Origin: Haliotis rufescens
Lineage: Eukaryota
Length of the DNA stretch: 64,000 bases
Assembly (NCBI RefSeq): GCF_023055435.1
Contig: NW_025963857.1
Location: forward strand, 23,808,001-23,872,000
Direction of reading: 5' to 3'
The position numbers and the translations under genes are program-made. Numbering within the stretch: position 1 is the first letter of the stretch; every line of letters starts with the position of its first letter. Shown in pieces: positions 31,701-51,970 of the stretch. Below the pieces are notes generated by a model. That model did not search any database and had not been told where the DNA came from. It saw nothing but the letters and a program-made list of their open reading frames with translations.

Positions 31701-33476
31701 CCACATTAAGCTGACACGCCGTGATATACCTGGAATACTGTTCAAAGCAGCGTTAAACCCAACTCACTCACACTAAATGCCATTCAAAGACATGGAAGAG
31801 TTATTTTCACTTTAACATCTTATCGTTCAGGACCCTTGTGTGAAGAGGAGAACGCAACAGTGTTTAGAGCAGAGAGCAACGTCGCTCAGTTCCAGTACAG
31901 AACCAGCTCTCCGAACACAGCGGGGAAAAAATTGTCTGTCATCATCACTTCATTCAACCTGGGAATAAATGGTAACTATTTACGCCATGATGATTTTCTT
32001 GCTATTGTTAAGTAAGTTAACACTTAATCAAGCATTGCTTCATGAAACATACGACTAACAGGTTAACTAGGAGATCACAGTAAACATGGGGAGCACGGGT
32101 GGCCAAGTCGTCTAAGGCGCCGCGATTCCCTGTGCAGAGTTGCGTCCCTTGGGCACGCCAGAAACCTATGATTGTGGGTTCGAATCCCGGTTCGCCCCGA
32201 TTATGTTTCTAGGTTTGTCAGCACCATACCCGTGCTCGTGGGTTTCACCGAAGTGGTAAATGTCTGAGACCTGCATCACTTCGGGTTTTCCTCCCACATT
32301 AGGCTGACACGCCGTGATATAACTGGAATACTGTTAAAAGCGGCGTTAAACCAAACTCACTCACTCACAGTAAAAATGATAAGCAACGAGACTGTTCAGT
32401 AATAATTTTAGCCAGTATTGCTACCTGGAGTGGTACTAAATATATCATTCATTAATTTATGAAACATTTAGAAGTTAACTTTATTTCTGAAGTAACAATA
32501 AATCCCTTGTCATAAATAGCATGTAAGTTTTAGTTGTGTCACCCCGATTATGTTTCTAGGTTTGTCAGCACCATACCCTTGCTCGTGGGTTTCGCCGAAG
32601 TGGTAAAGGTCTGAGACCTGCATCACTTCGGTCTTTCCTCCCTCATATAAGCTGACACGCCGCGATATAACTGGAATACTGTTAAAAGCAGCGTTAAACC
32701 CAACTCACTCACTCACTCACTAGTTGTATCACGGTTATTCAGGCAACAGACGAGTAAGAGAGATTTACGTACTTCGCCAATCCTGTTATGTCAATACCAC
32801 GATTTTTCTGCAATGTCTCTACCTTTACCTCGTACCCGGGAAGATCCGGGTTAGAACAGGTCTATAGCAACTCAGGGGGCACGGGTGGCCCAGTCGTCTA
32901 AGGCGCCGCGATTCGCTGTGCAGAGTTGCGTCCCCTGGACACGCCAGAAAACCTATGATTGTGGGTTCGAATCCCGGTTCACCCCGATTATGTTTCTAGT
33001 TTTGTCAGCACCATACCCGTGCTCGTGGGTTTCACCGAAGTGGTAAACGTCTGAGACCTGCATCACTTCGGGCTTTCCTCCCACATTAAGCTGACACGCC
33101 GTGATATAATTGGAATACTGTTAAAAGCGGCGTTAAACCCAACTCACACACTCACTCACTATAGCAACTCATGCTTGGCGTGAGAGGCTACTAACGGGAT
33201 CGGGTGGTCAGGCTCGCTGACTTAGTTGATGCATGTCATTGTATCTCAATTGCGTGGATCGATGCTCATGATGTCAATCACTGGATTGTCTGGTCCTGAT
33301 TCGATTATTTACAGACCGTCATCATATACCTGGAATATAGCTGGGTGCGGCTTTAAACAACAAACACACAAGTAAACCTTCACCTAGTAGGGGGTTGAGT
33401 AGCCATTCGGCAATAACGTTGGCATGACAATCCGGGTTGGATTACCCACATGGGCACAATGTGTGAAGCGTGTCTC

Positions 33477-33512
<36 letters not shown>

Positions 33513-33910
33513 ACCCCATCGCGCACCCAACCCACACACCCGAGTAATATTCTTGGAATATTGCTAAAGCGGCATAACGAAGCACTCACTCTGCGACTTT
33601 ATCTATTGGTATATATATGCATGCACATTTCATAAAGTGTCTTGATGGGTTTTTTCCAGGAACATGTGCTTCGATTGAGTACCAGTGCGCCAACAAACTG
33701 TGCATACCCAAAGACTTATTGTGCAATGGATACAACGAGTGTTCTGATAACTCAGATGAGAATGACTGCAGCGGCCCCAATGGCACCCCTCCGGGAGAAA
33801 ACGTGGGACTTATAGTTGGTTTGACATTCGCTTGTTTGTTGGTGGTCGCAGTGGCAGCATTGTGTCTGATTAGGCGACTAAGGCGTCAGCAGGGATATGA
33901 CAGTGTTTAG
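28752..33910 (+). CDS. Cluster gene 3: signal peptide + CUB-like + LDLa + TM + YDSV tail, 230 aa; exons 28752-28836, 30744-30959, 31831-31971, 33660-33910
   Basis: Canonical splice sites, all phase 1, 693 nt in frame. MASCCVVSLLCAIFLS..; ANCNNN..QQCNLII..NRLLIDIT..DNCTDTKLDI; GPLCEE..SVIITSF; CASIEYQCANKLCIPKDLLCNGYNECSDNSDE; TM VGLIVGLTFACLLVVAVAALCLI. Confidence 0.87.
30045..30587. mobile_element. Non-autonomous DNA transposon (MITE) with ~70-bp TIRs and a 9-bp TSD, Mutator-like
   Basis: TIR CATCTTCC(C/G)GAGGCAAGAGAGTTAACTGAC...; flanks TCCTGGTAG / TCCTGGAAG. Confidence 0.85.
32875..33160 (+). mobile_element. SINE family A (tRNA-Leu-like head, ~270 bp, (CACT)n tail), representative copy. 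Others at ~1530-1787(-), 4307-4608, 4626-4895, 10476-10718(-), 14326-14602(-), 16291-16536, 23118-23316, 24489-24730(-), 27948-28224(-), 31500-31772, 32088-32367, 40534-40812, 46059-46343, 46480-46760(-), 55902-56176(-), 62075-62348(-)
   Basis: A-box TGGCCCAGTCGTCTAAGGCG and B-box GGGTTCGAATCCC; TSD CTATAGCAACTCA here and CTGTGACCGACCGA at ~14313/14602. Confidence 0.9.
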
Positions 33911-34049
33911 GGGGCAGGACGCTGACCCATTTCGCGAACACCTGGTGTCGTCACCGATTTTTAGTGGTCCATTCATATCATTGTCTCCGCTGTCTTGCAT
34001 TTTAGGCCCAGTGGAATCTGGGTTTTTTGTCAGATGGTCGATATTTCTA

Positions 34050-34594
34050 CATCTTCCGGAGGCAAGAGAGTTAACTGACTTTAATAGTCCAGTTTCCACC
34101 TTTGCCGAACTTGGCTGGAATTCCTGGGCTCGATCGTAGCGCCACCAGTTGTTATTATGAGTTTTATCCCTTCTAAGCCTCTCCTATGGACCAATCAGAT
34201 TCCGCCTCTCGTATCACTCGCATTTGCTTCAAACAAAACAGCGGCGCCCAGTCAAGACGATTTGATCGACAATCAAGGTCTATATTGTGATAAAACGGGT
34301 CTTACATCGCGAAATGCAGCAAATCACGTGAGCACCTTGATTCAAAACATGAAAAGATTAAGAAAATATCTGTTGACAAAGAGTTGGCGTTGCACATGCT
34401 TTGCAAATCCTGCAATCGACCGAAATCTGCTCGACAGTTTACGAACCGGATTTCGATTTCGTTGCGCGATTTTGATTCGACTATGCATAGACTCGTTAGT
34501 CCAGCCAAAATGTAACTCCATAATACCAGCCTAGTTCGGCAAGGGTGGAAACTGGACTTTTATTGTTAGTTTACTCTCTTGCTTCGGGAAGATG
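34050..34594. mobile_element. Second copy of the same MITE in opposite orientation, just after the gene 3 stop; a one-ended fragment also lies at ~473-564
   Basis: Same TIRs and internal sequence reversed; flanks ATATTTCTA / ATATTTCTT. Confidence 0.85.
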
Positions 34595-36840
34595 ATATTT
34601 CTTCGAACATGCCTTTTTCCAACCCGAACGGAGGGATACTCTAGCTTAAATAAAACAAGTGTTGTATGATATTTAAACCAGATAAACAGGGGTGGGGTGA
34701 GTTCATTTGAATAATTCTGACAGGGGTGAAGGGATTTCGGTATTGTGGTGAACATTATGGTTTGTGTAATTGATAGATAACATGCATAGAATAAATCCCA
34801 AATTACTTATCTTGTATTCGCCTAATCAGGTTTGGAGGAATAACGTTTTCGAAACTTGTCAACTTTTCAAATAAGAAGTGGATTGACAGACATGGACACA
34901 AGGTTCCAAACCTATACATTAAAAACCGGTTAAATTAAGTAGTTTTAGTTCAATTCCCTATTGACACGCACACGTGTTTCCACAAACTGACTGCATTAGT
35001 TCCACAGGCTCACTGTGTTAATTCCACAAGTAAACTGTATTATTCCACAAGTATAATGACATTTTGTTAAGTCCACAGGTGTGCTAATTCCACATGTATC
35101 AAGTTTCCACAAGTTTAAACCAGTATGATGACGCCACGGTATTGTTGTTGCAGATGGTTCTGAGCCTGGAATTCACTGGCCATTTTGAACATGCATTTTA
35201 AACAAGTTTTAACATTTAACCTGACGCAACGAGAGGGCATTATGAAACATTATAGAACTTTTATAACCATAACATGTTTGAAGTCAGAGACGTCACTCGA
35301 ATCATTTGATTCCGGAAGTAGAATCCTTCCGGAGATTGCCGATTCTAGTTCCGGAATCAACAGATTCATATGATTTCTCCCTTACGAACAGTGCTTTTCC
35401 CACAAGTATACTGTTTTAATTTCACATGCAAAACGTGACAATTCCACAAAAGTGCCACGTTAATTCCTCAAAGATTCGCGGAAGTGGCCCTGATAGGTGA
35501 CCGGAACTGTAACTCGATAAAGGGTAGGTAGGTGCCTGCAGTGGTGTATTGTCTTTCCTTGTACACTGAAACTGGTTCTCAAATCTATCAGCACAGTGAG
35601 CAATGTGATGATAGTTTCCGGGTTGGTTTTGAAGTGTGGGTGAATGTTTTCATACAGTGTACCTGGTTTTATTTGTTTTGGGATGTACTCGCGTCTTTTT
35701 ACTTCACATGTGGGGTAGAATAGGTCTTCAGCCAACCATGCATACCATAAAAGGCGACTATGCTTGTCGTAAAAGGTGACTAACGGGATCGGGTGGTCAG
35801 GCTCGCTGACTTGGTTGATGCAGGTCATCGATCCCAATTGCGTGGATCGATGCTCATGATATCAATCACTGGATTGTCTGGTCCAGACTCGATTATTTTA
35901 CAGACCGCCGTCATATAGCTGTAATATTGCTGAGTGCGGCGTAAAACAACAAACCAACCAACCAACAACTCCACATGTATAATATTGCAATAAAGGAAAT
36001 CGGTATGTGTCTGCTTAGTTTCCATTTGTCTTTGGGGGGGGTTCGAGGATACATTTGTTGGTGTGGTCAAAGCCACTGCAATTCGCTGTGCGGAGTATTG
36101 CCCCTCAGTTTGGAATCGCCAGCAGTGGGTTACATCGCCCGATCGAGTTTGATCCTTGGAATGAACGCACGTTATTTTATCACGACGCATTGCCATTATG
36201 ATCAACCCTAGTTTGTCATTTCCGATCAGTTGTATCATGTAGAAATGTTTTGACATTACATTTAGACTTGTAGTATGTCATATCAAATGTATTGTTGCTT
36301 CGTGACAGAAAGACGCAGGTCTTTAGGACATTTAAGCAAGAAGTTGGCACAAACTGTGGCCATCTCTCAGTTTTGTTTGTGTGTGTGCTGTTTAACGCCG
36401 CACTCAGCAATGTTCCAGCTATATGACGGCTGTCTGTAAAATAATCGAGTCTGTACCGTACAATCCAGTGATTTATATCATGAGCATCTTTCCACGCAAT
36501 TGGGATCGATGACATGTATCAACCAAGTCAGCGAGTATGACCACCCGATCCCGTTAGTCGCGTTTTACGACAAGCATATTCGCCTTTTGCGGCAAGTATG
36601 GGTTGCTGGAGACCTATTCTACCCCGGAATCTTCACGGGTCTCATCTCTAAGTTGGGCTGTTTCTTTATGCATATAAATTCGAATATCTACTCGGATTGG
36701 CAAAATAAATCAAGTGAATTTGGACAAGAAGATTAATTGAAGGTATATAGATGATCTGATGTCGTTCAGTAATAGTCAAATAGCCGATTCCCTTCGACTG
36801 ATTTGACCCACATGAATTAGAAATAAACGAGTCCAGTGAA

Positions 36841-37047
36841 GTAAGGATAAGAATTTATGGATGAACAACTTCTTTATAACAATTAAAGAGCGACGTTTTG
36901 TGTAGATTCTAACACCGTTATCAAGCGAGTGATAACGGTGTTAGAACCTACACCGAAACGTCGCTCTGAAATTGTAATAAAGAAGTTGTTCATCCATAAA
37001 TTCTTATCCTCACTTAGTACCCGAACTTCTAAATGCCTATCAAAGGA
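36841..37047. mobile_element. Palindromic Penelope-LTR-like insertion with a variant minimal hammerhead core
   Basis: ~85-bp inverted arms centred at ~36926; TGATAAC-GGTGT..ACACC-GAAACGTC followed by AATAAA; flanking duplication GAGTCCAGTGAA / GAGACCAGTGAA. Confidence 0.6.
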
Positions 37048-37094
37048 GAGACCAGTGAAACCACTTTATTTGTTTCATATATTGATTGAGTGAC

Positions 37095-37450
37095 AACAAA
37101 CTTCAACTTGTCAAAGGCAACTCTTATATGTTGAGCACTATTCCCGTAGCTCCAGCCTTTGGTGACTACAACTTCAACTTGTCAAAGTCAACTATTTTAT
37201 GTTGAGCACTATTCCCGTAGCTCCAGCCTTTGGTGACTACAACTTCAACTTGTCAAAGTCAACTTTTTTATGTTGAGCACTATTCCCGCAGCTCCAATCT
37301 TTGGTGTCTACAACTTCAACTTGTCAAAGGCAACTCTTTTATGTTGAGCACTAATCCCGTAGCTCCAGCCTTTGGTGTCTACATTTCACAACGTTTTGAA
37401 GTACTATCGGGCTTGCTCTTTCTATGAATATTTCAAAGAGCGTCATGCTC
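37095..37450 (+). repeat. 71-bp tandem repeat (x4) derived from a Penelope-like RT fragment
   Basis: Units at 37168 and 37239 among others; translates to ..STNPVAPAFGVYISQ.., matching the RT fragment at 17130. Confidence 0.75.
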
Positions 37451-39349
37451 TTGTTCAAACAAGGCGTTGTAATATTATATGATTATGTAATGTCATTGAT
37501 GACTTTTTATACGTAAACAGAAGATCATAATTATAGTGAAGAAGAAATGCGCTTACATTGTGTTAGAGATGACCAACGCTGAACGACAGGAATAATACAT
37601 GTCGCACGAACTGTATGCTGATTATAACCATCCGAGCGTACCGGGGAGAAAACTCACTGTATACCATTATGTATTTAGCGGTATGCCAGGGCACATAAGG
37701 CAAGAGTTCAGGACCCCTGAATATATGTGATGTCTGCAGGTTCTACGACACCAGATCAGAACCAGTGCAGATCGAGAGAAATATGCAGGCTGTGGTTGGA
37801 GGATATTTTGTAAGATTTTTATGTCTTTTAAATGTAAATTCATCCAGTTAATAAAACTGACCATGTTTTTTCTATATTTAGTACTGTTTTTTTCAACATT
37901 GTGATTTATGCTGAATGCGACCACAGATATTTTAAAGTAGGTGACATTTGGTGCGGAACTGGGGATTAGCATCCTGTACTCGGAAAAGGAGCAGGCTAAG
38001 CTTATCATTTTGTTTTGTTTTTATTGCTGCTCTAAGGCCAAACTGTGCACACACGTACAGGTAATAGCTATTGAATGCTTAGTCATTTTTTTTAAATATA
38101 AAGTTACTATAGAAGTCTATGGGAAAACATTTGGTTGTGTGTAACCTGCAGGAGCGTAGCTAGGAATAAATACAACTGTAGGCACAAAGTTGAATACCGT
38201 AAATGTGAGGTCGCGACGCTCGAGTTGAATAGGGGGCGGGGAAATTAGGGGTATTTCCTCCGCCACCCAAATATTTACTTTTATAGATAGTAGGATATGC
38301 AATTTACTGCTATTTATTTATTTATTACTTATTTATTACCACATCTTGAAACAAATATAACCAAACAAACAGGCTGTAAAAATATTTTTTCATTTTATAT
38401 TTATTATAGTTGGAAATTAATTTACATTATAACATATCATTTAATAATGTTCAGTTTCTGCATCAGTTTCCGTGGTGAAAAAATTAGATATCCTACAATT
38501 AGGAACAACGTTTATGTATTATTATAGGTACGTTTGGTAACCACTTATTTGGCTAGATTGACGATGTGATAGGAGAGTCACAGAAAAGTCTCCTGCTTGG
38601 GAAAGTCACGTTTTGACGAGTCCTATTCGAGACACAGATTAAATTATTTTCATGATATGACAATACTCCATTAATTTGTCTATGTTCATCTTCAATGAAG
38701 TCAAAGCATCTGTTCGCTTCAAACACTTTCCATGACTCTCTCAATGCTGGACCGCCTCCATTGTATAGTGGTAGACCGTCCGCCCGGAGAGCGGAAGGTC
38801 CGGGGTTCGATCCCCGGCCGCGTCATACTAAAAGACGTTAAAAGATGGTACTTGTTGTTACCCTGTCTGGCGCTCGGCATTAAGGGGCTAAAACAAGGAC
38901 TGTATACTTTGTCTGAGTGGGGTATTCATGTTAAACTGCGGCATGGTATCTCAGTGAGCTAGCACTATAAATCGGCATCAGTCCGGACTAGTACAAGCAG
39001 CCACACAAACACAAACACACACACGTACATGCACGTCGCTATATAAGTGCAATAATCTTGGACGCGACGTTAAACCCCATTTCACCTCACCTCACAATGC
39101 TCGCAGGAATGCCTTTGTGCACAAAATTATAGGGAAGATCATTCTCACTAGTTCACTGATATCTAGCCACAAACTTGCCCGAATAGAGAAAGGGCAGCAA
39201 AAACAAACTTTCAAATGGCGCATACACTTCTTCTTCTGTGACTCAAGTTCAATGAGACGTCGCATTAACAGCGTGTATGACCACCCCATGCTACAAAACA
39301 CACAAAAACTCTCCGGCGCACAAAGTAAGTCGTCTGATGACGTCACGTT

Positions 39350-40457
39350 GGATACCCCGCCATTCTTCTTAGAGGGCCTAGATCAGTTCTTGTCGGTTGA
39401 CAGGAGGATGTGGTCGCTGTCGAACACGACAATCCATGCAAACCCCGAGTTGTTCTATTGGGGGCATGTCTGAGGAGCGAGCAGGCCACGACAAGGAAGT
39501 TCTGTATGATTCGGGATGTAGGGAGTCTGGCGTTGTCATGCTAATAAAGGACACTACGTGGCAGCTGCTATAGAAATGGTCGGACAATCGGACGAAGAAC
39601 GTCATCCATGTAACACTGAGCTGTCAAATGTCCGTTAACGATGACCAGTGGTGTTCGCTCCTGCCTACAAATCAATCCCCACACCATAACACCAACTCAA
39701 CCATACGGCACGACCTCCTGAACACAACATGCCGCCGTTCGTTCTTCCCTTCGGCGGTAAACACGCTGTCTTCCATCAGCTCTAAACTGACAGAACTGGC
39801 TTTCATCAGTGAAGACGATGTTGCACTGGCAATAATAGTCCTCTGTAAGGTCTGTAAGCCCTAACTTATTTAGCCCTGGCCACTGCCTGTCGAGTAAGCA
39901 TATACCTTAAGGCATCCGTCGCTGATGTCGTCACTGTCAGGAATCGATTCCAGAGATGCAAAGTACGCAAGTACCGGTCTTTATTAGGCGTAGTTACCCT
40001 GGGTCTGCCTGTTCTTGGCATGTCTGATGTCTGTCCGGTCTGTCTGTAACGTTGCATCAGGTTAGTTACAGCAACACGGGAGCATCAAAAGTTCTAGCAA
40101 TATGGGCATGGGTGGCTCCCATCTGTATCCTACCAAGGGCCCACTCGCGGTGTTCGGGTGTCAGTCGTGGCATTTTTGTGATGGTTTCTTATCAGTGTGT
40201 GTGTCTGACTTGCCATACCGTCTGTATCAGTTACATACCCTTATTGCACGTGTAGTTTCGGCTGCCCAAGCGGCACGTGTTTTTCACCTCTTCGCATTTT
40301 CGGCAAAAAAACATCCCGTGAACGTGTGTCACTTTCTGCAGAGGGCATTGTTGTGTTTGGATGATGTGTTTTGAATTGATCCCGGTCGAACTTGGTTTTT
40401 TTTAATTTTTGCAATTTCATTTTTAAAGTGGCAAAGTTTTTTTTGTTCGGCAGTTTG
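39350..40457 (-). mobile_element. Degenerate Tc1/mariner transposon with a frameshifted transposase
   Basis: Fragments MPRLTPEQREWA.., RYRQTGQTSDMPRTGRPRVTTPNKDRYL, IVFTDES..DGRQRVYRR, VMVWG, WPARSSDMPPIE. Confidence 0.85.
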
Positions 40458-40976
40458 TGTGTGCGTGCATTCGTGTGTGCGAAAATAATGCGTTATGGGT
40501 ATAAAGGTACTTATGAATCACAACAGTGAGGCAGGGGCACGGGTGGCCCAGTCGTCTACGGCGCCGCGATTCGCTATGCAGAGTTGCGTCCCTTGGGCTC
40601 GCCAGAAACCTATGATTGTGGGTTCGAATCCTGGTTTGCCCCAAATATGTTTTAGGTTTATCAGCACCATACCCGTGCTCGTGGGTTTCAGCGCAGTGGT
40701 AAACGTCTGAGTCCTGCATCACTTCGGGCTTTCCTCCCACATTAAGCTGGCACGCCGTGATATAACTGGAATACTGTTAAAAGCGGCGTTAAACCCAACT
40801 CACTCACTCACTACAGTGAGGATTACATATCTTCGTGAAAAGACATGCATCACATGTGTATAATTAAGAAAATTCAACCATACTGATAACAACCTATTAT
40901 ATCAACACAGTCATTTGGCTGTATCGCCGACCCATGTATCTGATACACATTGTCGAAGATGTTATCTCTGTCCAAG

Positions 40977-43907
40977 ATGGCGTCATGTTGTAGGACTCTC
41001 CTCTTGTTCATTGCACTTGTCTCTACCGGATCCGTGTGGGGTCAATCAACACCAGATCAATGTAAGTATGGTGCTGTCTACTCCCGTCTAGTTGTCTACA
41101 GTTTCTGTTTCATATAGACCAAAACACCGTCTTAGATATTTCCACCCACCTACTTCATCTTACGTCATAATGTATATCACACTGCGCGAAGACCTTGATA
41201 CATGGGTTTTTTAGACACTGATAAATACCTTTCTCATCATATACATGTATATATGATTTGAAACTACTTAATCATCAGGTCTCCAATATTGTCAAACCTC
41301 TATCTAAACCTACAAGGAACGTTATGCAATAATTTACGGACCAATCGATGTATGAAACTTATTTCGTGCTAGGGGAACTCATTTGCATATGTATCAGATC
41401 GTGACTCTAAGTTTATCGGATAAGTATATTGCACAAACACTCAGCAGTATGTGATGAATCATTCGATGAAATATAAAGCGTATTTGTCAAACACGAATAG
41501 ATATTCTCTTCACGTGTTTTCAGTTGTGCTGGAAGAGAACTGTGACAGCACCTTGCCCTTTTCCGAGAGCGTGATATTGTTTGCCTCAAACCTGTATTCA
41601 GTGGAGCAATGTAACCTCTCTATTCAGAGCAGCTTGGAAAACGAAAGGCTCCTCATCGACATCACCGTGTTAGACCTCGTGGACAGCTGCAGCAACACGA
41701 GTCTGGACATCCTAGATGAAAATGGAAACAGCATTGCAGGTATGGAGAGTTTTAATTTCAAATGAAATCGACAAACCTCATTACATATTACTCAGATGTT
41801 GATAGTACGATTCTGACTTTATCATGATCATGTGTTTCTGAATAACTATCAAATAGCGACGATACCAGGTGTTCGCGAAAAGGTGGACGTATCATGTCCC
41901 ACCGGTGCCACCCGTCACAAACACATGCAAAGGCAGGTCAATTGGCCAGAATTTCTCATTTCTGTACTTGTCGAAAATAAGTGATGATTGTGATTATACA
42001 TGGTCAGAGTGTTTGGTGCAGAAGCGTCCCTCAGTCGCGCCCCTTGCTAGTGTGTTGCTCTTCAAATTGTTCACAATAATAACTCAAACGAAATTTCTGC
42101 TTTATAAAACATTCGATGAATAATAATGGCATGTTGCTTCATAATACAGGTCCTCTATGTGAGGAGGATAACGCCCAAGTCTTCAAAGCACCGGGCAACA
42201 CTGCTCAATTTGATTACAAAAGTGACTCTCCGAAAACTAAGGGGAAATCATTGTCGATCCTCATTACTTCGTTCAACATGGGGGTTCAAGGTGTGTATCA
42301 AAGTTGTCATATTTTCATTATTTGTTTTACGATCTGCTAACCGATGTGACTCAGGTTTTAATGTGTCTATGTTGCACTTTAATTAAAATATTGTTTATTA
42401 GTATTGTAAAAAGTATAAATCCTTCATCCACGATAGACCGAAGTGGTAAACGTCTGAGACCTGCATCACTTCGGGCTTTCCTCCCACATTAAGCTGACAC
42501 GGCGTGATATAACTGGAATACTGTTGAAAGCGGCCTTAAACCCAACTCACTCACTCACTCATCCACCTTTAGAGCACTTCATTCAATCATTCAACAAATC
42601 ACCAAGCTAAGACGGGACCCAATCGCACACAACGATCTTAACGTTACGACTATCTTAAGTCAATGTTAACGTATTGGGGTAACGATCGTCGTAGAGTTTG
42701 CTTTGTGGACCCAGGTCCCCAGCACTGTATTGCGTTTCGCAGGAGATATTCCATTTACTAATGCTGTTTTGATCCATGTAAGATGTCCATTTTGATGAAA
42801 GTACTAGATACTGCCAGAGACCACATATCAGTATGGAGGCCACACATAACGTTCCCTTCTGTGCATCAAATAATAATTAATACCAGGCACATGTCAACAA
42901 GAACGAAACAGCATCATAACACAGCAACAATATATTAAGTAAACGTTCCAAATGTATATATTTTTACACTTCCGGTCCCTTCGGACAAAACACCAGGCAC
43001 TAAAAAATCACATTCTGTTGCTTTATCGTTATTAGTTCCGAGAAAGAAACATTCTTCCTCTACAATTATTCTTCACCAAGACTGAATAGGCCATACTGTG
43101 CATATTATGAGAAAGAAACATTCTTCCTCTACAATTATTCTTCACCAAGACTGAATAGGCCATACTGTGCATATTATGAGAAAGAAACATTCTTCCTCTG
43201 CAATTATTCTTCACCAAGACTGAATAGGCCATACTGTGCATATTCTGAGAAAGAAACATTCTTCCTCTACAATTATTCTTCACCAAGACTGAATAGGCCA
43301 TACTGTGCATATTCTGAGAAAGAAACATTCTTCCGCTACAATTATTCTTCACCAAGACTGAATAGGCCATACTGTGCATATTCTGAGAAAGAAACATTCT
43401 TCCTCTACAATTATTCTTCACCAAGACTGAATAGGCCATACTGTGCATATTATGAGAAAGAAACATTTTTCCTCTACAATTATTCTTCACCAAGAATAGG
43501 CTATACTGTGCATTGACACATGCTTATTTCGGGGACCGAATTGTAAACAATTTAAACAGTAAGTAAACCAGTAATATTATCGAAGTCAAAAACCTGTTTA
43601 TCTATTGGTATACACGCACATTTCATAAAGTGTCTTGGTTGTTTTTGTTTCAGGGAAATGTGCTTCGATTGAGTACCAGTGCGCCAACAAACTGTGCATA
43701 CCCAAAGACTTATTGTGCAACGGATACAACGAGTGTTCTGATAACTCAGATGAGAATGACTGCAACGGCCCCGATTACATTCCTCTGGGAGAAAACGCGG
43801 GACTTATAGTTGGTGTGACATTCGCTTGTTTGTTGGCGGTTGCAGTGGCAGCATTGTGTCTGACTAGGCTACTTAGGCATCATCGGGGATATGACAGTAT
43901 TAATTGA
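40977..43907 (+). CDS. Cluster gene 4 (mosaic): signal peptide + CUB-like + LDLa + TM + YDSIN tail, 231 aa; exons 40977-41061, 41524-41739, 42150-42290, 43654-43907
   Basis: Canonical splice sites, all phase 1, 696 nt in frame. Exons 1-3 are closely similar to gene 5; exon 4 is nearly identical to gene 3 exon 4. Confidence 0.88.
43040..43515. repeat. 69-bp minisatellite (~7 units) in gene 4 intron 3
   Basis: Unit GAGAAAGAAACATTCTTCCTCTACAATTATTCTTCACCAAGACTGAATAGGCCATACTGTGCATATTAT. Confidence 0.95.
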
Positions 43908-46900
43908 GTAACCGTTTTAAATAAAGCTTATGTCCCAGAGGATTCTGCAACAGGATGAATGCAAGATTTTGTCAGATTGATGATTACCAGCATACATCTG
44001 TGGCCGCTAATATATGACAGTATGCCTTTCGATGCTATATTCTAATTAAAATAATTAACTGGACTACTTTGTATTAGAGGACCCGTGAAGATCCGGGGAA
44101 GGTCTTCAGCAACCCATGCTTGCCGTAAAAGGCGACTGTGCTTGTCGTAAGAGGCGACTAACGGGATCGGGTGGTCAGACTTGCTGACGTGGTTGATGCA
44201 TGTCATCCATCCCAGTTGCATGTTTGCATTATACATTTTTATATGTAGATGGTCACTGTAGTTAACGAGATACATTTATAAATACCATTCGGGACCACTC
44301 GTTTTATTCCGGGACAATCTGAATGAAGCCCTTCTCGCTATCACTAGTTGTTGAAATACATTAGATGGGAGTTGCAGTATCTCCCGTCGACAATATGTAT
44401 CTTCCTTGCCGTAAAAGGCGACCATGTTGTCGTAAGAGGCGACTAACGTGATCAGGTAGTCAGGCTCGCTGACTTGGTTGGTGCTTGTCATCGTATCCCA
44501 GTTACGTAGACCGATGCTCATGATGTCAATCACTGGATTGTCTGGTCCAAACGACAATCCAGTTGGTCGATTATTTACAGACCGCCGTCATATAGCTGGA
44601 ATATTGCTGAGTGCGGCGGGAAACAACAAACAAACAAACAAACAAACAAACTTTGTATTACAGCAATAAGACGAAGGGACATATGTCATGCCTGGTCGGC
44701 TTGAAGGTACATAGTTCCCCGGTTAGAATCCGTCTGATCTGATGAAATAACAAAACTTACACATTATTTAGAATTAAATATGGTATATCCTTTACATGTT
44801 AAACTCTGCATTCTGATTGGTCCACAATCGGTATCGAATCTACTTTAGATCCTACTTTTGTGAATGGCCTATGTATAAGAAAATGTTTCTTTGAAAGCAC
44901 TGTTCTTCAAACACGACCGAAAGGTATTTTCTGGCTTAATCAAAAAAAGTGTGTAATGCTATTTAAACCAAACAAAAACGACGAAAAACGGCAATGTATT
45001 TCAGTACCATAAAATAGCGTGACATTTATATCTTCTCCTATATATTCTGTTCTATTTTCATACAGCTATTTTTACGTGTATACGTTTACGAAATGTACAT
45101 ACAGATTGACATAATTTATAAGCATAAAGAAATATAAAGTTAGACGTTATATCATTAAAGTAAAACCACGTCTAGCACAGCTAGCGCACTGACGTCACAC
45201 AATAAAGGTACGATTAGATAAATGTCACAGCTTGACCTGTCCGTCCTTTGTGACGTGGTACGTCATTTGTATTTTAAGGATTGCTGATTGACGCCCTAAG
45301 CGACATGCCACCTGTCATGCATGTTAAGTCTCAGCTTCAGTGCAGATAGATAAGCATACCATTCGTGACCAACTCGTGTTATTCCGGGACAAGCCGAATA
45401 GCGACTCGTGCCCCTCTCATGGCCATTTTTGTGACTAGGTTCCGCCTTAGCGCAAACGGGCATACCTAAAACAATTGTCAACTCGTTGCGTAATGGTTCA
45501 CGTATATTTCTCCATTTATTATATATATTTCAGATGCAATTTAAAGGACATCGGGACGTGCGGAATTATACAGTATGATTGAACACATTTAACTGTGTCT
45601 TAGGTATATTTTTAGATGCAAGACATATGTAAAATCAAAAATTATTTCTGAGGGATTATTTGACAAAGAACTCGAAATCATACGCGCATTCTGACTGGTT
45701 TGTCGTATTTTCGCACATAGCATTCATCGAGAGGGGGACGAGTCTTCTTGCAGGTTACGGAAAGGGGCGAGTGGTGACGAATGATAATTATACATGTCAA
45801 TCAGGTACAGTTAATTTATTAACGTCCATTCAAATGAAATTGTATAACATTCATTTCTTATATTGTCCAAATCAGCATGTAGTACGTACTTCTGTAAATG
45901 CATTTACTATCATGTGTAAAGCTTTATAATTGTTCTGGTAAGAGAGAAAGGATGGCTGGAGTGACAGTCGACTCACGGGACTCGGGACTCACGGTCCGAG
46001 GCCCCTTGTCTCACGTTTGGTCGACGCTTACCTGTGTCCGAGTTCAAGGCTCCACGGAGGGCACGGGTGGCCCAGTCGTCTAAGGCGCCGCGATTCGACG
46101 TGCAGAGTTGCGTCCCTTGGGCACGCCAGAAACCTATGATTGTGGGTTCGAATCCGAATCCGATGGGTTCACCCCGATTATGTTTCTAGGTTTGTCAGCA
46201 CCATACCCCTGCTCGTGGGTTTCACCGAAGTGGTAAACGCCTGAGACCTACATCACTTCGGGCTTTCCTCCCACATTAAGCTGACACGCCTTGATATAAC
46301 TGGAATACCGTTAAAAGCGGCGTTAAACCCAACTCACTCACTCAAGGCTCCACATACAATAGTCTTGTTCTATCCCATATGGTCCGCCTATGACCTTGTT
46401 ACGCCATTACTTCCTTAACTATACTTAGGATAAGTACGTGTCAAAAGTAACACTATCGTAGGGTCCGTCATGTAGAGCGAGTGAGTGGGTGAGTTGGGTT
46501 TAACGCCGCTTTTAACAGTACTCCAGTTATATCACGGTGTGTCAGCTTGTGTGTAGGAGGAAAGCCCGAAGTGATGCAGGTCTCAGACCTTTACCACTTC
46601 GGTGAAACCCACGAGCACGGGTATGGTGCTGACAAACCTAGAAATATAATTGGGGCGAACCGGGATTTGAACCCACAAACAAAGGTTTCTGGCGTGCCCA
46701 AGGGACGCAACTCTGCACAGCGAATCGCGGCGCCTTAGACGACTGGGCCACCCGTGCCCACCCGTTATGTAAAGATTAATACACGAGTGTCAGTCAGATA
46801 CCATTTATCTTACAGCGAACAGTGGAAAAACAAGTTGTAAGAGAAATTGTAGCCTGTAGTGTGAGTGCAGTAATAGCGGATCACTTTAGCATCGAATCGA

Positions 46901-48124
46901 TGCATTCCGTCTATTCTCATGATTGCAGTGGCGCATTAATACATAACAGGACGGCCATGAGTGACGTCACCCGACCCTAATGTGACCCTACACAAAAAGG
47001 TTTCCGCCAAGTATATGGATTATCAAGGCGATGATGATAATGCAAACTAGATAAGATCAAATGAATAAAGCCACAAAACCCATTCCATATCCAATAGAAA
47101 TCTCAGCACGATTCTGAGTGTATCACGAGCACGTGTTTATGAAACACTATCAAATAGAAATGATACCAGGTGTTCGCGAAAAGGTGAGCGTATCCTGTCC
47201 CACCGGTGGCACCTGCCACAAACACATGCAAAGGCCAGTCAGTTGTTCACCTGAAAAAACACGGGAACAGACATGTATGGTACAAGTCAAAATAGGGAAT
47301 TGCATCGGACATCATTTTTGTCAGGGATGCGTCAAATTTGGAAATGTCCTCCACATGTCTACCATAAAACGTTTTGAAAGCTTTACTGAGGCCTTGAATG
47401 TTGTAACCTTGATCAAACAACTTCTGATCAAGAGCCTTGGTAGAAAGAGCCCGCTCGATTGTATTTCAAAAGTTGTGAAATGTAAACACCAAAGGCTAGA
47501 GATGCTGGAATATTGCACGACGTGAAGGCAAAGTTGACTATTGGACTGTTGAAGTCATCCCTCTCATCATACAGTCTTGTGGAGAGTGATTTGTCACTCT
47601 GAATCATTATGCATAGATGAGGTGAGGTGAGATTTGGTTTAACGTCGCGTCCAAGATTATTGCACTTATTTGGCGACGTGCATGCACGTGTGTGTGTGGC
47701 TGCTTGTACTAGTCCGGACTGATGCCGATTTAATGTGCTAGCTCACTGAGATACCATGCGGCAGTTTAACATGAATATGCCACTCAGACACAGTATACTG
47801 ACTCCGAGCCGACCAGTCCTTGTTTTAGCCCCTTAATGACGAGCGCCGGACAGGATAATAACAAGTACCGTCTTTTAACGTCTTTTGGTATGACGCGGTC
47901 GGGGATCGAACCCCGGACCTTCCGCTCTCCGGGCGGACGCTCCACCACTAGACCACGGAGTCGGCCAGATCTAAATATGAAACAGATGAGGAGGTCCCAT
48001 TGGTCTCCTTTATTTCTAGTTCAGGTGGGTAAATCAGTGGAGGGAAATTAGCTATTTGATTGTTATAGAACGATATCAGATCATCAATATAACTAAAGCT
48101 TAAGTTACTTCTTGACCAAATTAA

Positions 48125-48371
48125 CTTGTTTAGATTTTGCCAATCCTCGCCAGACGGAAGTCCGTATGCCCAACGCGTCGACGATAATCGGCGACGAGCT
48201 GGGCACGATGTGCTTTTTCTCTATTCAAAATTTCGGCTGATAAATCCAGCGAATGGAACAACGAGGGAGGAAAACTTTCGTCAACATATCGCTGGCCAGT
48301 ATAATGTCCATTCACAATAACCAAATCAGTTCGCCTGCCATGTGTGACGCCGCCCCACACCATGACACTAC

Positions 48372-48402
<31 letters not shown>

Positions 48403-49014
48403 ATACCGATCATGGTCAAGAGTTGTTGCCCTGGCATGCCGCTCGCCGCTACGTCTCCAACAACGTTTTCTGCCATCAGTGAATCGTAGGCAACACCTGG
48501 ATGCGTCTGCAAACATGATGTGACGCCATGGCCGCATCAACCAGTCCCTTGTGTTGCCCAGCCTTCATTTTGTTCTACAGAATATTGATAACAGGAGCAG
48601 ATTTGAATCAATTGCGTATTTTTTAGGCCTGCCACGCCCAGATCTCATTGCAACCCCAGCCGTTGGAGGGCACCTGCCACAGAGTCGAGGAATTTAACTT
48701 TCTGATTAACCAAACGTTTGGACAATTTGAAATATTGACGTCCCCCATCTATCGTACCCACACTCCGCCATTTTGTCTGTTCATTGAAAAAGGCATTTTA
48801 AGCGTGTGCTCAGTTCAGTTGTATTAGTTCCATATAGGCGCAAACAGTTTAGCTTCTGTGCGCACGTGCATTACATGTTTTTCATACACGATGTGAAATT
48901 TCATTGTATTTCGACATTGCGTTCAGATGCAACGCCACAGTATTGTAAATGTACACCTCAACGATAGCCGCTTTCAAATCAGCAGATAGATCCCTTATTC
49001 ATTGCTGGTAGTAT
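48125..49014 (-). mobile_element. Second degenerate Tc1-like transposon
   Basis: WRHIMFADASRCCLRFTDGRKRCWRRSGER..YGGG..SVMVWGG..RTDLVIVNGHYTGQRYVDE. Confidence 0.8.
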
Positions 49015-49125
49015 GTACAAATTGGTAACAACCTGATATATGAACACAGTCACTTGATATCAGTGATGTATCGCCGACCCTGAATCTGTAACACTCTGTC
49101 TCAGATGTTATCTCCTGTTTCCAAG

Positions 49126-51970
49126 ATGGCGTCGTGTTGTGAAACTGTCCTCCTGTTCATTGCACTTGTTTCTATCGGATCCGTGTGTACAAAGACACCA
49201 GAGCAATGTAAGTGTGGTGCTGTCTGTTCCCGTCTTGTTGTCTATAGTTTCTGTTTCATATAGACCAAAACACAGTCTGGGATATATCTAACAACCTACA
49301 TCATCTTACGTGTATATCACACTGCGCGAAGACTTTGATATATGTATTTTTTTAAACACTGAAAAATACCTTTCTCATTATATACATGTATACTTAATCA
49401 TCCGGTCTCCAATATTGTCAAACCTCTATCTAAACCTACAAGGAACGTTATGCAATAATTTACGGACCAATCGATGTATGGAACGTATTAAAAGTATTTC
49501 GTGCTGGAGGAACTCATTTGCATATTTATCAGATCGTGACTCTAAGTTTAGTATATTGCACTGACACTCTTAAGTATGTCATGAAACATAAAGCGTATTT
49601 GTCAACCACCAACATATATTTACTTCACGTGTTTTCAGGGGTGTTCGAAGAGAACTGTGGTGGTATCATGAGTTTTTCCGAGAGTGTGATATTGTTCGCC
49701 TCCGACCTGCATTTTGTGGAGCAATGTAACCTCGTCATTCAGAGCAGCTTGGAAAACGAAAGGCTCCTCATCGACATCACCGTGTTAGACCTCGTGGACA
49801 GCTGCGCCAACACCAGCCTGGACATCCTAGATGGAAATGGAAACAGCATTGCAGGTATGGAGAGTTTTAATTTCAAATGAAATCGACAAACCTCTTTCCA
49901 TATATCGCAGAAGTATCTGCGATTGTACGATTCTGACTTTATAATGAGTATGTGTCTATGAATAACTATGAAATAGTGACGACGCCAGGTCTCACCGGTG
50001 GAACCTGTCACAAACACATGCAAAGGCAGGCCAATTGGCCAGAATGTATTTCTGAATTCTGTACTTGTCGCAAATAAGTGATGATTGGGATTATACATGG
50101 TCAAAGTGTTTGGCTAAGTAAACCAAGGTGCAGGAACTTTCTGAGCAGAGTCGCGTCCCTTATTTATGCAAGGACCCAGGGATCATGGTTTGAGTCCTAA
50201 ATTCGCCCTTAATACGATCCTAGATTTGTTACCAGTTACACAGTTTCTTTGCTCGTGGGTTCACCTTTAGCTCTGAATTCATTACAATACCGTTAAATAT
50301 ACTGGTATCCTGAAAACTCATTATGTTGCTCTTCAAATTGTTCACATTAATACTTAAACGAAATTTGTACTTTGTAAAACATTTGATGAATAATAATGAC
50401 ATGTTGCTTCATGATACAGGTCCTCTATGTAAGGAGGATAAGGCCCAAGTCTTCAAAGCACCGGGCAACATTGCTCAATTTGATTACAAAAGTAACTCTC
50501 CAAACACTGAGGGGAAATCATTGTCAATCATCATGACTGCGTTCAACATGGGGATTGAAGGTGTGTATTAAAGTCCTATTTTCATCACTTATGTTACGAT
50601 CTGCTAACCGTGGTGGCCCAAGTTAGAATGTGTCTCTTTAGCACTTTAATTAAAATAGTGTGTATTGTTATTCTAAAAAGTATAATAACTGCATCCACGG
50701 TAGGCGTATTTCATTCATCTTTAATCAACATTACATTCATTCAACAAATCACCTCGCTGAGACGGAGCCCACTTGCACACAACGATCTTAGCATTACGAC
50801 TATCGTACGTCTGGGTTAAAGTACCGCCTGAGTGGTCTAGTGGTAGAGCGTCCGCCCGGAGAGCGGAAGGTTCATGGTTCGATCCCCGGCCGCGTCATAC
50901 CAAAAGACGTTAAAAGATGGTACTTTTTGTTACCCTGTCTGGCGCTCGGCATTAAGGGGCTAAAACAAGGACAGGTCGGCTCGGAGTCAGTATACTGTGT
51001 CTGAGTGGGGTATTCATGTTAAACTGCGGCATGGTATCACAGTGGGCTAGCACTATAAATCGGCATCAGTCCGGACTAGTACAAGCAGCCACACACACAC
51101 ACACACACACACGTGCATGCACTTCGCTATATATGTGCAATAATCTTGGACGCGACGTTCAACCCAATTTCGCCTCACCTTCACCTCTGGGTTAAAGCAT
51201 GGGAGTTACGGTCGTCGTAGCGTTTGCTTTGGGCACGTGCACCCAGGTCCCCAGCACTGTGTTCGAGTTTCGAAGAGGTGACTCTGGGAAGTCCGGCTCG
51301 GCGATTTGTTGATCGCGACGTATCCCGACGGCGTCATCAATCACTGGTTTGTCTGGTCCAAACTCGATTATTTACGGATCCCCTTGATGTAGCTGTTGCA
51401 GCGTGCAATGACATACACTCGCTTGTAAACCTTTGGCCCCTGTTTCATCCCACATGTGCTTTATATTTTTAAGGCTCTCATTCCTGTATGACAGAGAAGT
51501 GTCGCTTATGTCTTCCAGGGTCGTGTTCCGAGCTTGACTTCCAGTGTGACAACAAACTTTGCATCCCGAAGGATTTGGTCTGCAATAACTACAACGAGTG
51601 TTCTGATAATTCCGATGAAACAGCTGTTTGTAATTCAACTCTAACCTCGACAACTCCGCTCTCGACATCTTCTACTTCCTCGACACCTACTTCTTCCTCG
51701 ACGCCTACTTCTTCCTCGACAGCAACTTCTGCCTCGACACCTACTTCTTCGTCAACTCTGTCATCGCCAAAACCGACATCGGCATCTGCTTCTTCTTCGA
51801 CAGCAGCTTCTTCCTCGGCAGCAACTTCTGCCTCGACATCGACTCCTTCGTCTACCCTGTCCCCGCCGAGACCGACATCGGCATCTCCGCCTGCGACTTC
51901 CCCACTAACACAGATATGTATTGTGGGCCTAACTACGGCATCGATTGTTGTCAAGATGAATTTTTACTGA
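49126..51970 (+). CDS. Cluster gene 5: signal peptide + CUB-like + LDLa + Ser/Thr/Pro mucin-like stalk + C-terminal hydrophobic segment, 296 aa; exons 49126-49207, 49639-49854, 50420-50560, 51519-51970
   Basis: Canonical splice sites, all phase 1, 891 nt in frame. LDLa CSELDFQCDNKLCIPKDLVCNNYNECSDNSDE, then ~85 aa S/T/P/A-rich sequence, ending ICIVGLTTASIVVKMNFY*. Confidence 0.87.
50822..51185 (+). mobile_element. SINE family D (tRNA-derived head, ~350 bp, (CACCT)n tail), representative copy. Others at ~2810-3110(-), 38750-39094, 47618-47965(-), 55310-55427(-), 56853-57202(-), 61442-61776
   Basis: A-box TGGTCTAGTGG, B-box GGTTCGATCCC, central GTCATACCAAAAGACGTTAAAAGATGGTAC; TSD TCTGGGTTAAAG at 50810-50821 and 51186-51197. 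Confidence 0.9.

What the first reader, a model, noticed from the sequence alone, without database searches (positions are those of the whole stretch)
40880..43907. Gene 4 is a recombinant: gene-5-type CUB ectodomain joined to a gene-3-type LDLa-TM-tail exon
Seen: gene 4 aligns closely with gene 5 from ~40888 (vs ~49027) through exons 1-3 and their introns to ~42745 (vs ~51278). From ~43598 it instead matches gene 3 (vs ~33598); the LDLa [35 protein letters not shown] is identical. The switch lies in intron 3 (42745-43595), which holds a private 69-bp minisatellite. Inference: unequal crossover or gene conversion in uniformly phase-1 introns recombines recognition and anchor modules, a combinatorial diversification mechanism.
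Basis: partly seen in the sequence, partly recalled or inferred. Interest (0 to 1): 0.75.

Follow-up and report, generated by a model that had tools for sequence, protein, structure and literature searches.

The report
Mosaic abalone receptor gene, real but one-off
One gene in a red-abalone cluster of small cell-surface proteins really is a patchwork, with its outer domain from one neighbour's lineage and its last exon from another's, but this is a single old rearrangement of a familiar kind, not an ongoing mixing system.

Summary
Gene 4 (RefSeq LOC124116356, Haliotis rufescens) matches gene 5 from 40884 to 42742 (79-87% DNA, introns included). From 43597 to 43901 it matches gene 3 (89%; the LDLa peptide is identical). 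Synonymous divergence between genes 3 and 4 is about 1.07 in exons 2-3 but 0.06-0.09 in exon 4. Site patterns switch with Fisher p = 7e-16.

It is not an assembly artefact. Contigs from two other studies bridge both junctions, an RNA-like run covers only the exons, and H. cracherodii has the same mosaic protein. Gene-3-type proteins of H. asinina and H. rubra carry this exon-4 type, so the gene-3 lineage was the donor.

The "private minisatellite" intron stretch is an 855-bp internal fragment of a dispersed repeat at least 1.4 kb long, cut at both ends, with one 69-bp segment amplified. All homology edges abut repeats and the flanks are not collinear. This fits non-homologous joining better than a clean unequal crossover or gene conversion.

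It is the only recent exchange among 14 cluster genes, and orthologues have stayed distinct since speciation. There is no evidence for a combinatorial mechanism. The ectodomain folds as a CUB domain, but Pfam does not detect it.

The parts
40884..42742 (+). Gene-5-type block of gene 4: 93 nt upstream of the ATG, exons 1-3, introns 1-2 and the 5' part of intron 3. It is interrupted by a gene-4-only SINE at 42437-42561.
   Evidence: blastn to 49023-51275 at 79-87%. Non-coding substitution divergence is 126/1038 = 12.1%.
40977..41061 (+). Exon 1 (signal peptide). The RefSeq model starts 6 codons upstream, at 40959.
   Evidence: RNA-like contig X15 record 9 joins 41061 to 41524.
41524..41739 (+). 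Exon 2, first half of the CUB-fold domain.
   Evidence: The fold is CUB.
42150..42290 (+). Exon 3, second half of the CUB-fold domain.
42745..43599 (+). Internal fragment of a dispersed repeat at least 1.4 kb long. It lacks about 900 bp at its 5' side and about 40-50 bp at its 3' end, and it lies exactly between the two homology blocks.
43040..43513 (+). 69-bp unit x 6.9, an amplification of a segment that is present once in other copies of the repeat.
43597..43901 (+). Gene-3-type block: the last 57 nt of intron 3 plus the coding part of exon 4.
   Evidence: blastn to 33598-33907 at 89.4%. 26 substitutions in 304 aligned positions. Map of differences.
43654..43907 (+). Exon 4 coding part: LDLa, short stalk, TM helix, basic tail and stop codon.
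   Evidence: PF00057, E = 7e-11. Model helix 201-232.
43908..44064 (+). 3'UTR of gene 4. It is unlike the 3' flanks of genes 3 and 5.
   Evidence: Single copy in the genome. RNA-like contig 43735-44064. No match.
33598..33907 (+). Counterpart block in gene 3 (donor lineage). It is bounded on the left by a SINE-like 3' end (about 33540-33597) and on the right by a very abundant repeat that starts at about 33911.
49023..51275 (+). Counterpart block in gene 5. It is bounded on the left by a dispersed repeat (48147-49020).

Best explanation
Gene 4 is a genuine, transcribed mosaic member of a tandem family of small type-I membrane proteins (signal peptide, one CUB-fold domain, one LDLa module, TM helix, short tail) in red abalone.

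Its promoter-proximal 93 nt, exons 1-3 and most introns share recent ancestry with gene 5. The last 57 nt of intron 3 and the coding part of exon 4 share recent ancestry with gene 3. The gene-3 lineage is the source, because gene-3-type proteins of distant abalones already carry this exon-4 type.

The join happened once, before H. rufescens and H. cracherodii separated, and has been inherited as an ordinary gene since. All of this is shown.

The following is inferred. The join was made by non-homologous, microhomology-type end joining or template switching, either as the junction of a small tandem duplication or as a patch replacement. A truncated repeat fragment sits at the breakpoint. The uniform phase-1 introns merely allowed the product to stay in frame. 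It swapped a mucin-stalk type last exon (as in gene 5) for a TM-anchored one.
For: - Block boundaries and identities.
- Synonymous divergence: g3-g4 is 1.07 in exons 2+3 but 0.055 (LDLa) and 0.090 (rest) in exon 4. g4-g5 is 0.19 in exons 2+3 and saturated in the LDLa.
- Site-pattern switch: p = 6.7e-16.
- Reads: the left junction is bridged in 2 of 4 runs (X2 42633-42820, X6 42698-43079). The right junction is bridged in 3 of 4 runs (X2 43408-43687, X6 43438-43687, organism-B run X12 43541-43715).
- RNA-like run X15: it lies on the exons and has zero depth in the non-repeat intron bins (41168-41518, 41987-42103, 42689-43624). It does have depth over repeats within introns 2 and 3. It shows the exon 1-2 splice. 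One 131-nt contig has exactly the length of 42194-42290 plus 43654-43687.
- RefSeq proteins: XP_046333618.2 (H. rufescens) and XP_071087759.1 (H. cracherodii, 94% identical) are the same mosaic.
- Trees: in the N-terminal part, the AU test rejects gene 4 grouping with gene 3 (p = 1e-53). In the exon-4 part, gene 4 sits with the gene-3 proteins of four species (support 91/95) and gene 5 is outside.
- Non-homologous junction: the repeat fragment is truncated at both ends relative to other copies. A TTT overlap at the right junction is read directly.
- Single event: plus orthologue comparison.
Against: - Short-exon protein trees are weak. (g4,g5) gets 48/0 in exon 2, and exon 3 even pairs g3 with g5 at 52/36.
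- In the N-part tree (g4,g5) has only 61/91 support, and a g4-plus-all-g3 clade is not rejected (p = 0.18). In the exon-4 tree a g4+g5 clade is not rejected at 0.05 (p = 0.063).
- The two blocks have statistically equal neutral divergence (12.1% versus 8.9%, p = 0.67), so the order of events is open.
- No contig spans the interior of the 69-bp array, and run X12 has no depth at 42689-43039.
- The exon 3-4 splice is supported only by contig-length arithmetic and by the RefSeq models. X15 is only guessed to be RNA.
- All four block edges abut repeats, so the original extents may be hidden.
- The truncation of the repeat rests on five other copies.
Confidence: 0.6

Rival explanations
1. Classical interlocus gene conversion. 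After gene 4 and gene 5 duplicated, a short homologous non-reciprocal tract copied gene 3's exon 4 into gene 4. The repeat fragment inserted later.
For: The gene-3-like block is short (about 305 bp) and bounded on both sides. The donor direction fits.
Against: The left edge lies at a repeat fragment that is 3'-truncated and absent from gene 3. A later insertion would have had to land exactly on the tract edge and also lose its own end. There is no homologous flank on either side of the tract between genes 3 and 4. Before the event the partners were diverged by about dS = 1, which is a poor substrate for homologous exchange.
Confidence: 0.17
2. Homologous unequal crossover in intron 3 between a gene-3-type and a gene-5-type neighbour. 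This made gene 4 the junction gene of a tandem duplication, in the manner of haemoglobin Lepore or hybrid opsin genes.
For: The two blocks are collinear: 33598-33907 then 40884-42742 parallels 43597-43901 then 49023-51275. They are of indistinguishable age. One event would explain everything.
Against: The 5-7 kb between the blocks shows no collinear homology, and gene 4's 3'UTR is single-copy. That said, some cluster-unique intergenic DNA proved to be dispersed repeat, which weakens this argument. Genes 3 and 5 do not carry the junction repeat, so repeat-mediated homologous exchange is not seen. The repeat's 3' end is missing at the junction.
Confidence: 0.12
3. Retroelement-associated exon capture. 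A 5'-truncated repeat copy, together with downstream gene-3 sequence (intron end plus exon 4), was inserted as one piece into gene 4's intron 3, by 3' transduction or template switching during reverse transcription.
For: The repeat fragment is 5'-truncated and directly abuts the gene-3-like block in the same orientation. The whole right-hand part of gene 4 (repeat, block, unique 3'UTR) has no gene-5 counterpart.
Against: Gene 3 has no copy of that repeat upstream of exon 4. The repeat lacks its own 3' end. I found no poly(A) tract or target-site duplication by eye. The class of the element was not determined.
Confidence: 0.1
4. No exchange took place. Exon 4 simply evolves slowly under purifying selection while the ectodomain evolves fast.
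For: The LDLa module is conserved across the family. The near-identity of its 107-nt core relative to the rest of exon 4 is explainable by selection, because few synonymous differences are expected at 9% divergence.
Against: Synonymous divergence for the same gene pair differs more than 10-fold between exons. 57 nt of intron align only here. Gene 5's LDLa is saturated at synonymous sites against both genes.
Confidence: 0.01
5. Assembly chimera: two loci were joined wrongly across the repeat or minisatellite.
For: No single contig spans the 69-bp array.
Against: Both junctions appear in contigs from two other studies, and the right junction also appears in another organism's run. The RefSeq proteins of two independently assembled species show the same mosaic. 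The length of the RNA-like contig fits the exon 3-4 splice.
Confidence: 0.01

Closest known systems
Hybrid genes made at the junction of misaligned tandem paralogues (haemoglobin Lepore, red/green opsin hybrids). Recalled, not from a call.
   Same: The 5' part comes from one paralogue and the 3' part from a neighbour. There is a single switch inside an intron, and the product is in frame and expressed.
   Different: Here the switch is occupied by a truncated repeat fragment. The flanking intergenic DNA is not duplicated, and the 3' block ends at the stop codon.
Mosaic paralogues from interlocus gene conversion (for example RHD/RHCE and MHC genes). Recalled.
   Same: A short patch of a gene has a different, younger ancestry than the rest, and the transfer is non-reciprocal in appearance.
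   Different: There are no homologous flanks around the patch. It is a single old event with no sign of continued homogenisation since the H. rufescens / H. cracherodii split.
Exon shuffling of symmetrical phase 1-1 extracellular modules (Patthy's rule) and L1-mediated 3' transduction (Moran and colleagues, 1999). Recalled.
   Same: All introns are phase 1, and CUB and LDLa are classic 1-1 modules. A repeat fragment lies next to the moved exon.
   Different: The exchange is between close paralogues of one family, not a new domain combination. Transduction is not shown.
Neto1/Neto2 (CUB-CUB-LDLa-TM auxiliary subunits of kainate receptors)
   Same: The order CUB fold, LDLa, TM. The profile matches Neto2 chain 7f56_E over positions 133-225 (E = 8e-11). 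Foldseek aligns about 200 columns to Neto2 chains.
   Different: There is one CUB instead of two, and Pfam finds no CUB hit. The tail is short and unrelated. It belongs to an abalone tandem family with TM, mucin and GPI-like ends. No link to glutamate receptors was tested.

Membership tests
LDL-receptor class A module (PF00057) | Pfam score above the gathering threshold | tested here: met
   42.6 bits against a cutoff of 24.1 for gene 4's exon 4. 3 of 3 exon-4 peptides and 4 of 4 full-length relatives hit.
LDL-receptor class A module (PF00057) | Six cysteines and the acidic D-x-S-D-E cluster (feature recalled) | tested here: met
   Read directly from the translated peptide.
CUB domain (PF00431) | Sequence match to the Pfam model | tested here: not met
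   No CUB hit at E <= 1 for 3 exon-2/3 peptides or for 4 full-length proteins. The PDB profile search matched through the LDLa region only.
CUB domain (PF00431) | Beta-sandwich fold of about 110 residues superposable on solved CUB domains | tested here: met
   In the model, residues about 31-150 have pLDDT blocks of 70-91. The top Foldseek hit is spermadhesin 1spp_B (E = 1.7e-8, TM 0.84 on the target, rmsd 2.0 over 116 columns). Neuropilin, TSG-6, PCPE-1 and C1r CUB domains follow. This is a predicted structure from a 9-sequence alignment.
Neto family | Two CUB domains followed by LDLa and TM | tested here: not met
   There is only one CUB-fold domain.
Neto family | Association with ionotropic glutamate receptors | not testable with these tools
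   No expression-site or interaction data were available.
Interlocus gene conversion tract | A segment whose divergence between two paralogues is far lower than in the rest of the genes | tested here: met
   dS 0.06-0.09 versus 1.07. Fisher p = 6.7e-16.
Interlocus gene conversion tract | The tract is embedded in homologous (older) sequence of the same two genes on both sides | tested here: not met
   On the left is a truncated repeat in gene 4 and a SINE-like end in gene 3. On the right are unrelated 3' flanks.
Unequal-crossover junction gene | A single switch between two neighbouring paralogues, with blocks collinear with the array | tested here: met
   The block ages are indistinguishable.
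Unequal-crossover junction gene | Duplicated, collinear intergenic DNA on both sides of the junction gene | tested here: not met
   Caveat: much of the intergenic DNA is repeat of unknown age.
Phase-compatible exon shuffling (1-1 modules) | All introns flanking the modules are in phase 1 | tested here: met
   Exon lengths are 85/216/141 in genes 3 and 4, and 82/216/141 in gene 5.

The most novel reading that the evidence does not exclude
The truncated repeat fragment and gene 3's terminal exon entered gene 4's intron 3 together, as one repeat-driven insertion (3' transduction or template switching). That would make this a natural, fixed and expressed case of transposable-element-mediated exon shuffling, one that exchanged the membrane anchor of a surface receptor within a fast-diversifying abalone family.
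Probability: 0.1. Interest if true: 0.55.

Novelty: new member of a known kind. Interest (0 to 1): 0.3.

Why it matters
This is a clean, dated example of how a tandem receptor family can swap its anchoring exon between paralogues. The outer CUB-fold domain of one lineage now sits on the TM anchor and tail of another, while its sister (gene 5) carries a mucin stalk. That is useful for annotating the many CUB-type surface-protein arrays in abalone, and for anyone studying anchor switching. It is still one historical rearrangement of a well-known kind. It does not open a new question, and it gives no evidence for a programmed or recurrent combinatorial mechanism.

Tried and rejected
**Tandem duplication including the intergenic DNA.** blastn of 42700-49200 against 27000-42000 found only dispersed repeats, not collinear matches. 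More sensitive searches of the flanks found nothing. I later realised that missing flank homology weighs equally against the conversion model, so it does not discriminate between them. Some 'cluster-unique' intergenic DNA is also dispersed repeat.

**A second, very recent conversion of the LDLa core.** There are 0-1 differences in the 107 nt at 43658-43764, against 19 in the next 135 nt. I rejected this as unnecessary. At about 9% neutral divergence only about 2 synonymous differences are expected there, and the rest of the exon differs mostly at non-synonymous sites (dN 0.156, dS 0.090).

**Ongoing concerted evolution.** Rejected. H. cracherodii gene 4 has a K-to-N change in the LDLa that its gene 3 lacks, and the stalk, TM and tail group by orthologue.

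**Ordering the two blocks in time.** Not possible: 12.1% versus 8.9%, p = 0.67.

**Exon-wise protein trees with in-window outgroups.** These were too short to resolve anything.

**A relic gene-5-type last exon downstream of gene 4.** None was found at E <= 0.01.

**Literature.** Two full-text searches listed nothing on this family or locus. I saw only the listings and read no paper. Supplements were not consulted. The three long proteins (1765-3442 aa) were not examined.
Full report
**What is there**

The window carries six members (genes 1-6) of a tandem family. With the flanking contig fetched, I count 14 LDLa-coding last exons over about 155 kb.

Gene 4 has four exons (40977-41061, 41524-41739, 42150-42290, 43654-43907) with canonical splice sites. 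All introns are in phase 1, as in genes 3 and 5. Names returned by the listing of cluster members identify gene 4 as RefSeq XP_046333618.2 (LOC124116356, Haliotis rufescens, 237 aa). It lies on a contig of the same length as the window's contig. It equals my model plus six N-terminal residues from an ATG at 40959. Gene 3 is XP_046333619.1.

**The observation**

blastn of 40001-44500 against the window gives these matches to gene 5:
- 40884-42016 matches 49023-50113 at 80.9% over 1163 columns.
- 42053-42436 matches 50324-50703 at 86.7%.
- 42580-42673 matches 50729-50823 at 82.1%.
- 42665-42742 matches 51191-51275 at 78.8%.

Then 43597-43901 matches gene 3 at 33598-33907, 89.4% over 311 columns. 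Gene 5 matches only 85 nt of the LDLa there, at 78.8%.

Exon by exon, g4-g5 versus g3-g4 identity is:

| Exon | g4-g5 | g3-g4 |
|---|---|---|
| 1 | 82.9% | 50.6% |
| 2 | 87.0% | 69.4% |
| 3 | 90.8% | 68.8% |
| 4 | 54.4% | 90.8% |

The LDLa peptide is identical in genes 3 and 4.

**More than chance or selection**

For the same gene pair (3 and 4), synonymous divergence is 1.07 in exons 2+3. In exon 4 it is 0.055 in the LDLa part and 0.090 in the rest. For genes 4 and 5 it is 0.19 in exons 2+3 and saturated in the LDLa.

Informative-site patterns (45|3, 34|5, 35|4) are 88/19/13 in exons 2+3 and 1/29/2 in the first 107 nt of exon 4, Fisher p = 6.7e-16. In addition, 57 nt of intron align between genes 3 and 4 only next to exon 4. 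Protein-level constraint cannot produce this.

The trees are weaker:
- Exon-wise protein trees with in-window outgroups are unresolved. (g4,g5) gets 48/0 in exon 2, and exon 3 pairs g3 with g5 at 52/36.
- With nine natural full-length proteins (alignment A4), the N-terminal part rejects gene 4 grouping with gene 3 of the two close species (AU p = 1e-53).
- In the same tree, (g4,g5) has only 61/91 support, and a g4-plus-all-g3 clade is not rejected (p = 0.18).
- The exon-4 part puts gene 4 with gene-3 proteins of four species (91/95) and gene 5 outside. The AU test for a g4+g5 clade there gives p = 0.063, and for a gene-3-only clade p = 0.04.

**Not an artefact**

I laid four runs on 40700-44200 (4 of 4 laid; all are Logan contigs).
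- The gene-5-like|repeat junction is bridged in 2 of 4 runs (X2 42633-42820 with no differences; X6 42698-43079).
- X12 has no depth at 42689-43039, and X15 is RNA-like.
- The repeat|gene-3-like junction, running on into exon 4, is bridged in 3 of 4 runs (X2 43408-43687, X6 43438-43687, and X12 of another organism label, 43541-43715 with 7 differences).
- No contig spans the interior of the 69-bp array.

Run X15 is only guessed to be RNA.
- It covers the exons and has zero depth in the non-repeat intron bins (41168-41518, 41987-42103, 42689-43624). It does have depth over repeats inside introns 2 and 3.
- One of its contigs joins 41061 to 41524.
- A 131-nt contig lies on 42194-42288 with 36 letters unplaced. 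That is exactly the length of 42194-42290 plus 43654-43687. This is arithmetic, not a displayed joint.
- Another contig runs 43735-44064, which defines a 3'UTR.

All 4 runs read T at 43721, where the reference has C. T is gene 3's letter.

Independently, H. cracherodii XP_071087759.1 (193 aa, N-terminally short) is 94% identical to gene 4 and has the same mosaic. That species also has a gene-5-type protein with a mucin stalk and a gene-3-type protein.

**Direction and timing**

H. asinina XP_067651242.1 and H. rubra XP_046550344.1 are gene-3-type throughout and carry the [13 protein letters not shown]-type LDLa-TM-tail. That exon type is therefore native to the gene-3 lineage, and gene 4 acquired it.

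Gene 5's LDLa is as far from gene 3's (29 differences in 105 nt) as from gene 4's (31 differences). That fits gene 5 keeping the older partner exon.

The event predates the H. rufescens / H. cracherodii split. Since then the stalk, TM and tail residues group by orthologue, and H. cracherodii gene 4 has an LDLa change its gene 3 lacks. There is thus no sign of continuing homogenisation.

Neutral divergence of the two blocks is indistinguishable: g4-g5 non-coding 126/1038 = 12.1%, and the g3-g4 intron flank 5/56 = 8.9%, p = 0.67. I cannot say whether gene 4 was born mosaic or became so later.

**Anatomy of the switch**

- The own-genome search returned 29 further matching stretches on other contigs and elsewhere on C79.
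- Five fetched copies align to 42745-43599. Four of the 5 reach 43599. Starts are at 42745 in 2 copies, 42749-42751 in 2, and 42806 in 1.
- In those copies the 69-bp segment occurs once. Here it is present 6.9 times at 97% identity.
- Comparing copy L036 with the other four shows that the element continues beyond gene 4's fragment. It continues about 90-940 bp to the left in 3 of 4 comparisons. It continues 39-52 bp to the right in 3 of 4 comparisons (8 bp in the fourth).

Gene 4 therefore holds an internal fragment cut at both ends. The gene-5-like block stops 2 nt before it, and the gene-3-like block starts at its last 3 nt (a TTT shared by the repeat end and gene 3).

The other edges also abut repeats:
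- Gene 5's block starts right after a dispersed repeat at 48147-49020.
- Gene 3's block starts right after a SINE-like 3' end.
- Gene 3's block ends at the stop codon, where a very abundant repeat begins at about 33911.

Gene 4's 3'UTR (43902-44067) is single-copy in the genome. It resembles neither gene 3's nor gene 5's 3' flank. The intergenic regions 3-4 and 4-5 share only dispersed repeats.

**Mechanism**

A homologous unequal crossover or a classical conversion tract should leave a seamless switch inside shared sequence. Here the switch is a doubly truncated foreign fragment with at most a few bases of overlap. Before the event the partners were diverged by about dS = 1.

I therefore favour a non-homologous, microhomology-type join (confidence about 0.6). 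It could be the junction of a small tandem duplication, which would explain the collinear order and equal age of the two blocks. Or it could be a patch replacement. This is inference.

The rivals are homologous conversion with a later insertion, homologous unequal crossover, and repeat-driven co-insertion of the exon. They remain possible at roughly 0.17, 0.12 and 0.10. The phase-1 introns did not cause the event. They only made its product readable.

**Generality**

Among 91 pairs of the 14 LDLa-coding stretches, g3-g4 is 99.0% identical and the next pair is 81.9%.

The low-copy self-comparison of the 212-kb cluster lists 36 low-copy matches. High-identity matches between the mapped family exons occur only among genes 3, 4 and 5. 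The other listed matches of 80% or more were not checked against exons. The one other triplet I could check (the upstream genes at contig positions 23.714, 23.731 and 23.740 Mb) has the same nearest pair in the exon-2-like and the LDLa exons.

One event, fixed before a speciation, is not evidence for a combinatorial diversification mechanism.

**What the protein is**

Pfam finds the LDLa module (42.6 bits against a cutoff of 24.1). It finds no CUB domain in exon peptides or in four full-length relatives.

An AlphaFold2 model of the RefSeq protein, built from the nine-sequence alignment, has mean pLDDT 65. Blocks over residues about 31-150 score 70-91, and there is a C-terminal helix at 201-232.

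Foldseek places the ectodomain among CUB domains. The top hit is spermadhesin 1spp_B (E = 1.7e-8, TM 0.84 on the target, rmsd 2.0). Neuropilin, TSG-6, PCPE-1 and C1r follow, and about 200 columns align to Neto2. The sequence profile also matches Neto2 from the end of the ectodomain through the LDLa into the membrane region.

The architecture resembles a one-CUB Neto. Membership of that family fails on the two-CUB criterion, and function is untested.

**Novelty and earlier notes**

Two literature searches (listings only) showed nothing on this family. Earlier notes of this scan describe the six-gene cluster and the anchor differences of the last exons. I confirmed gene 5's mucin stalk and the GPI-like end of gene 6's protein.

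**Verdict**

This is a real mosaic gene and a new example of a known kind of event. Interest is modest.

Noticed in passing
window 43721: The reference has C, but all 4 laid runs read T, which is gene 3's letter. In those runs the 107-nt LDLa core (43658-43764) appears identical in genes 3 and 4, and the contig there has roughly double depth in X2. This could be a rare allele, a reference error, or collapsed contigs.
   Followed up: partly
window 43765-43899 versus 33771-33905: In the stalk, TM and tail part of exon 4, genes 3 and 4 differ mostly at non-synonymous sites (dN 0.156, dS 0.090; 17 differences in 135 nt). The counts are too small to call positive selection.
   Followed up: no
window 51519-51969: Gene 5's last exon encodes an LDLa, a Ser/Thr/Pro stalk built from 18-nt and 99-nt repeats, and a short hydrophobic end. 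The H. cracherodii orthologue has the same design.
   Followed up: partly
window 19813-21157: There is an array of about nine 150-bp units related to a very abundant dispersed repeat, just upstream of gene 2's last exon (hits).
   Followed up: no
window 33478-33512 and 48373-48402: Long poly-C runs: one in gene 3's intron 3, and a 30-nt run upstream of gene 5.
   Followed up: no
contig positions 23712227-23802196, upstream of the window (loci L045-L057): Eight more LDLa-TM last exons of the same family lie here, one on the minus strand, giving 14 in about 155 kb. Their ectodomain exons are very diverged.
   Followed up: partly
protein P0012 (H. cracherodii gene-3 isoform X2): This annotated isoform lacks 14 residues at the start of exon 2, including the first CUB cysteine.
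   Followed up: no
window 41062-41523 versus 42291-42436: Substitution divergence between genes 4 and 5 is uneven: 9.3% in intron 1, and 18.2% in the first part of intron 3. This could mean more than one exchange between genes 4 and 5, or it could be alignment noise.
   Followed up: no
window 6290-6488: An assembly gap of 199 N lies inside the gene 1 region. It was left untouched.
   Followed up: no
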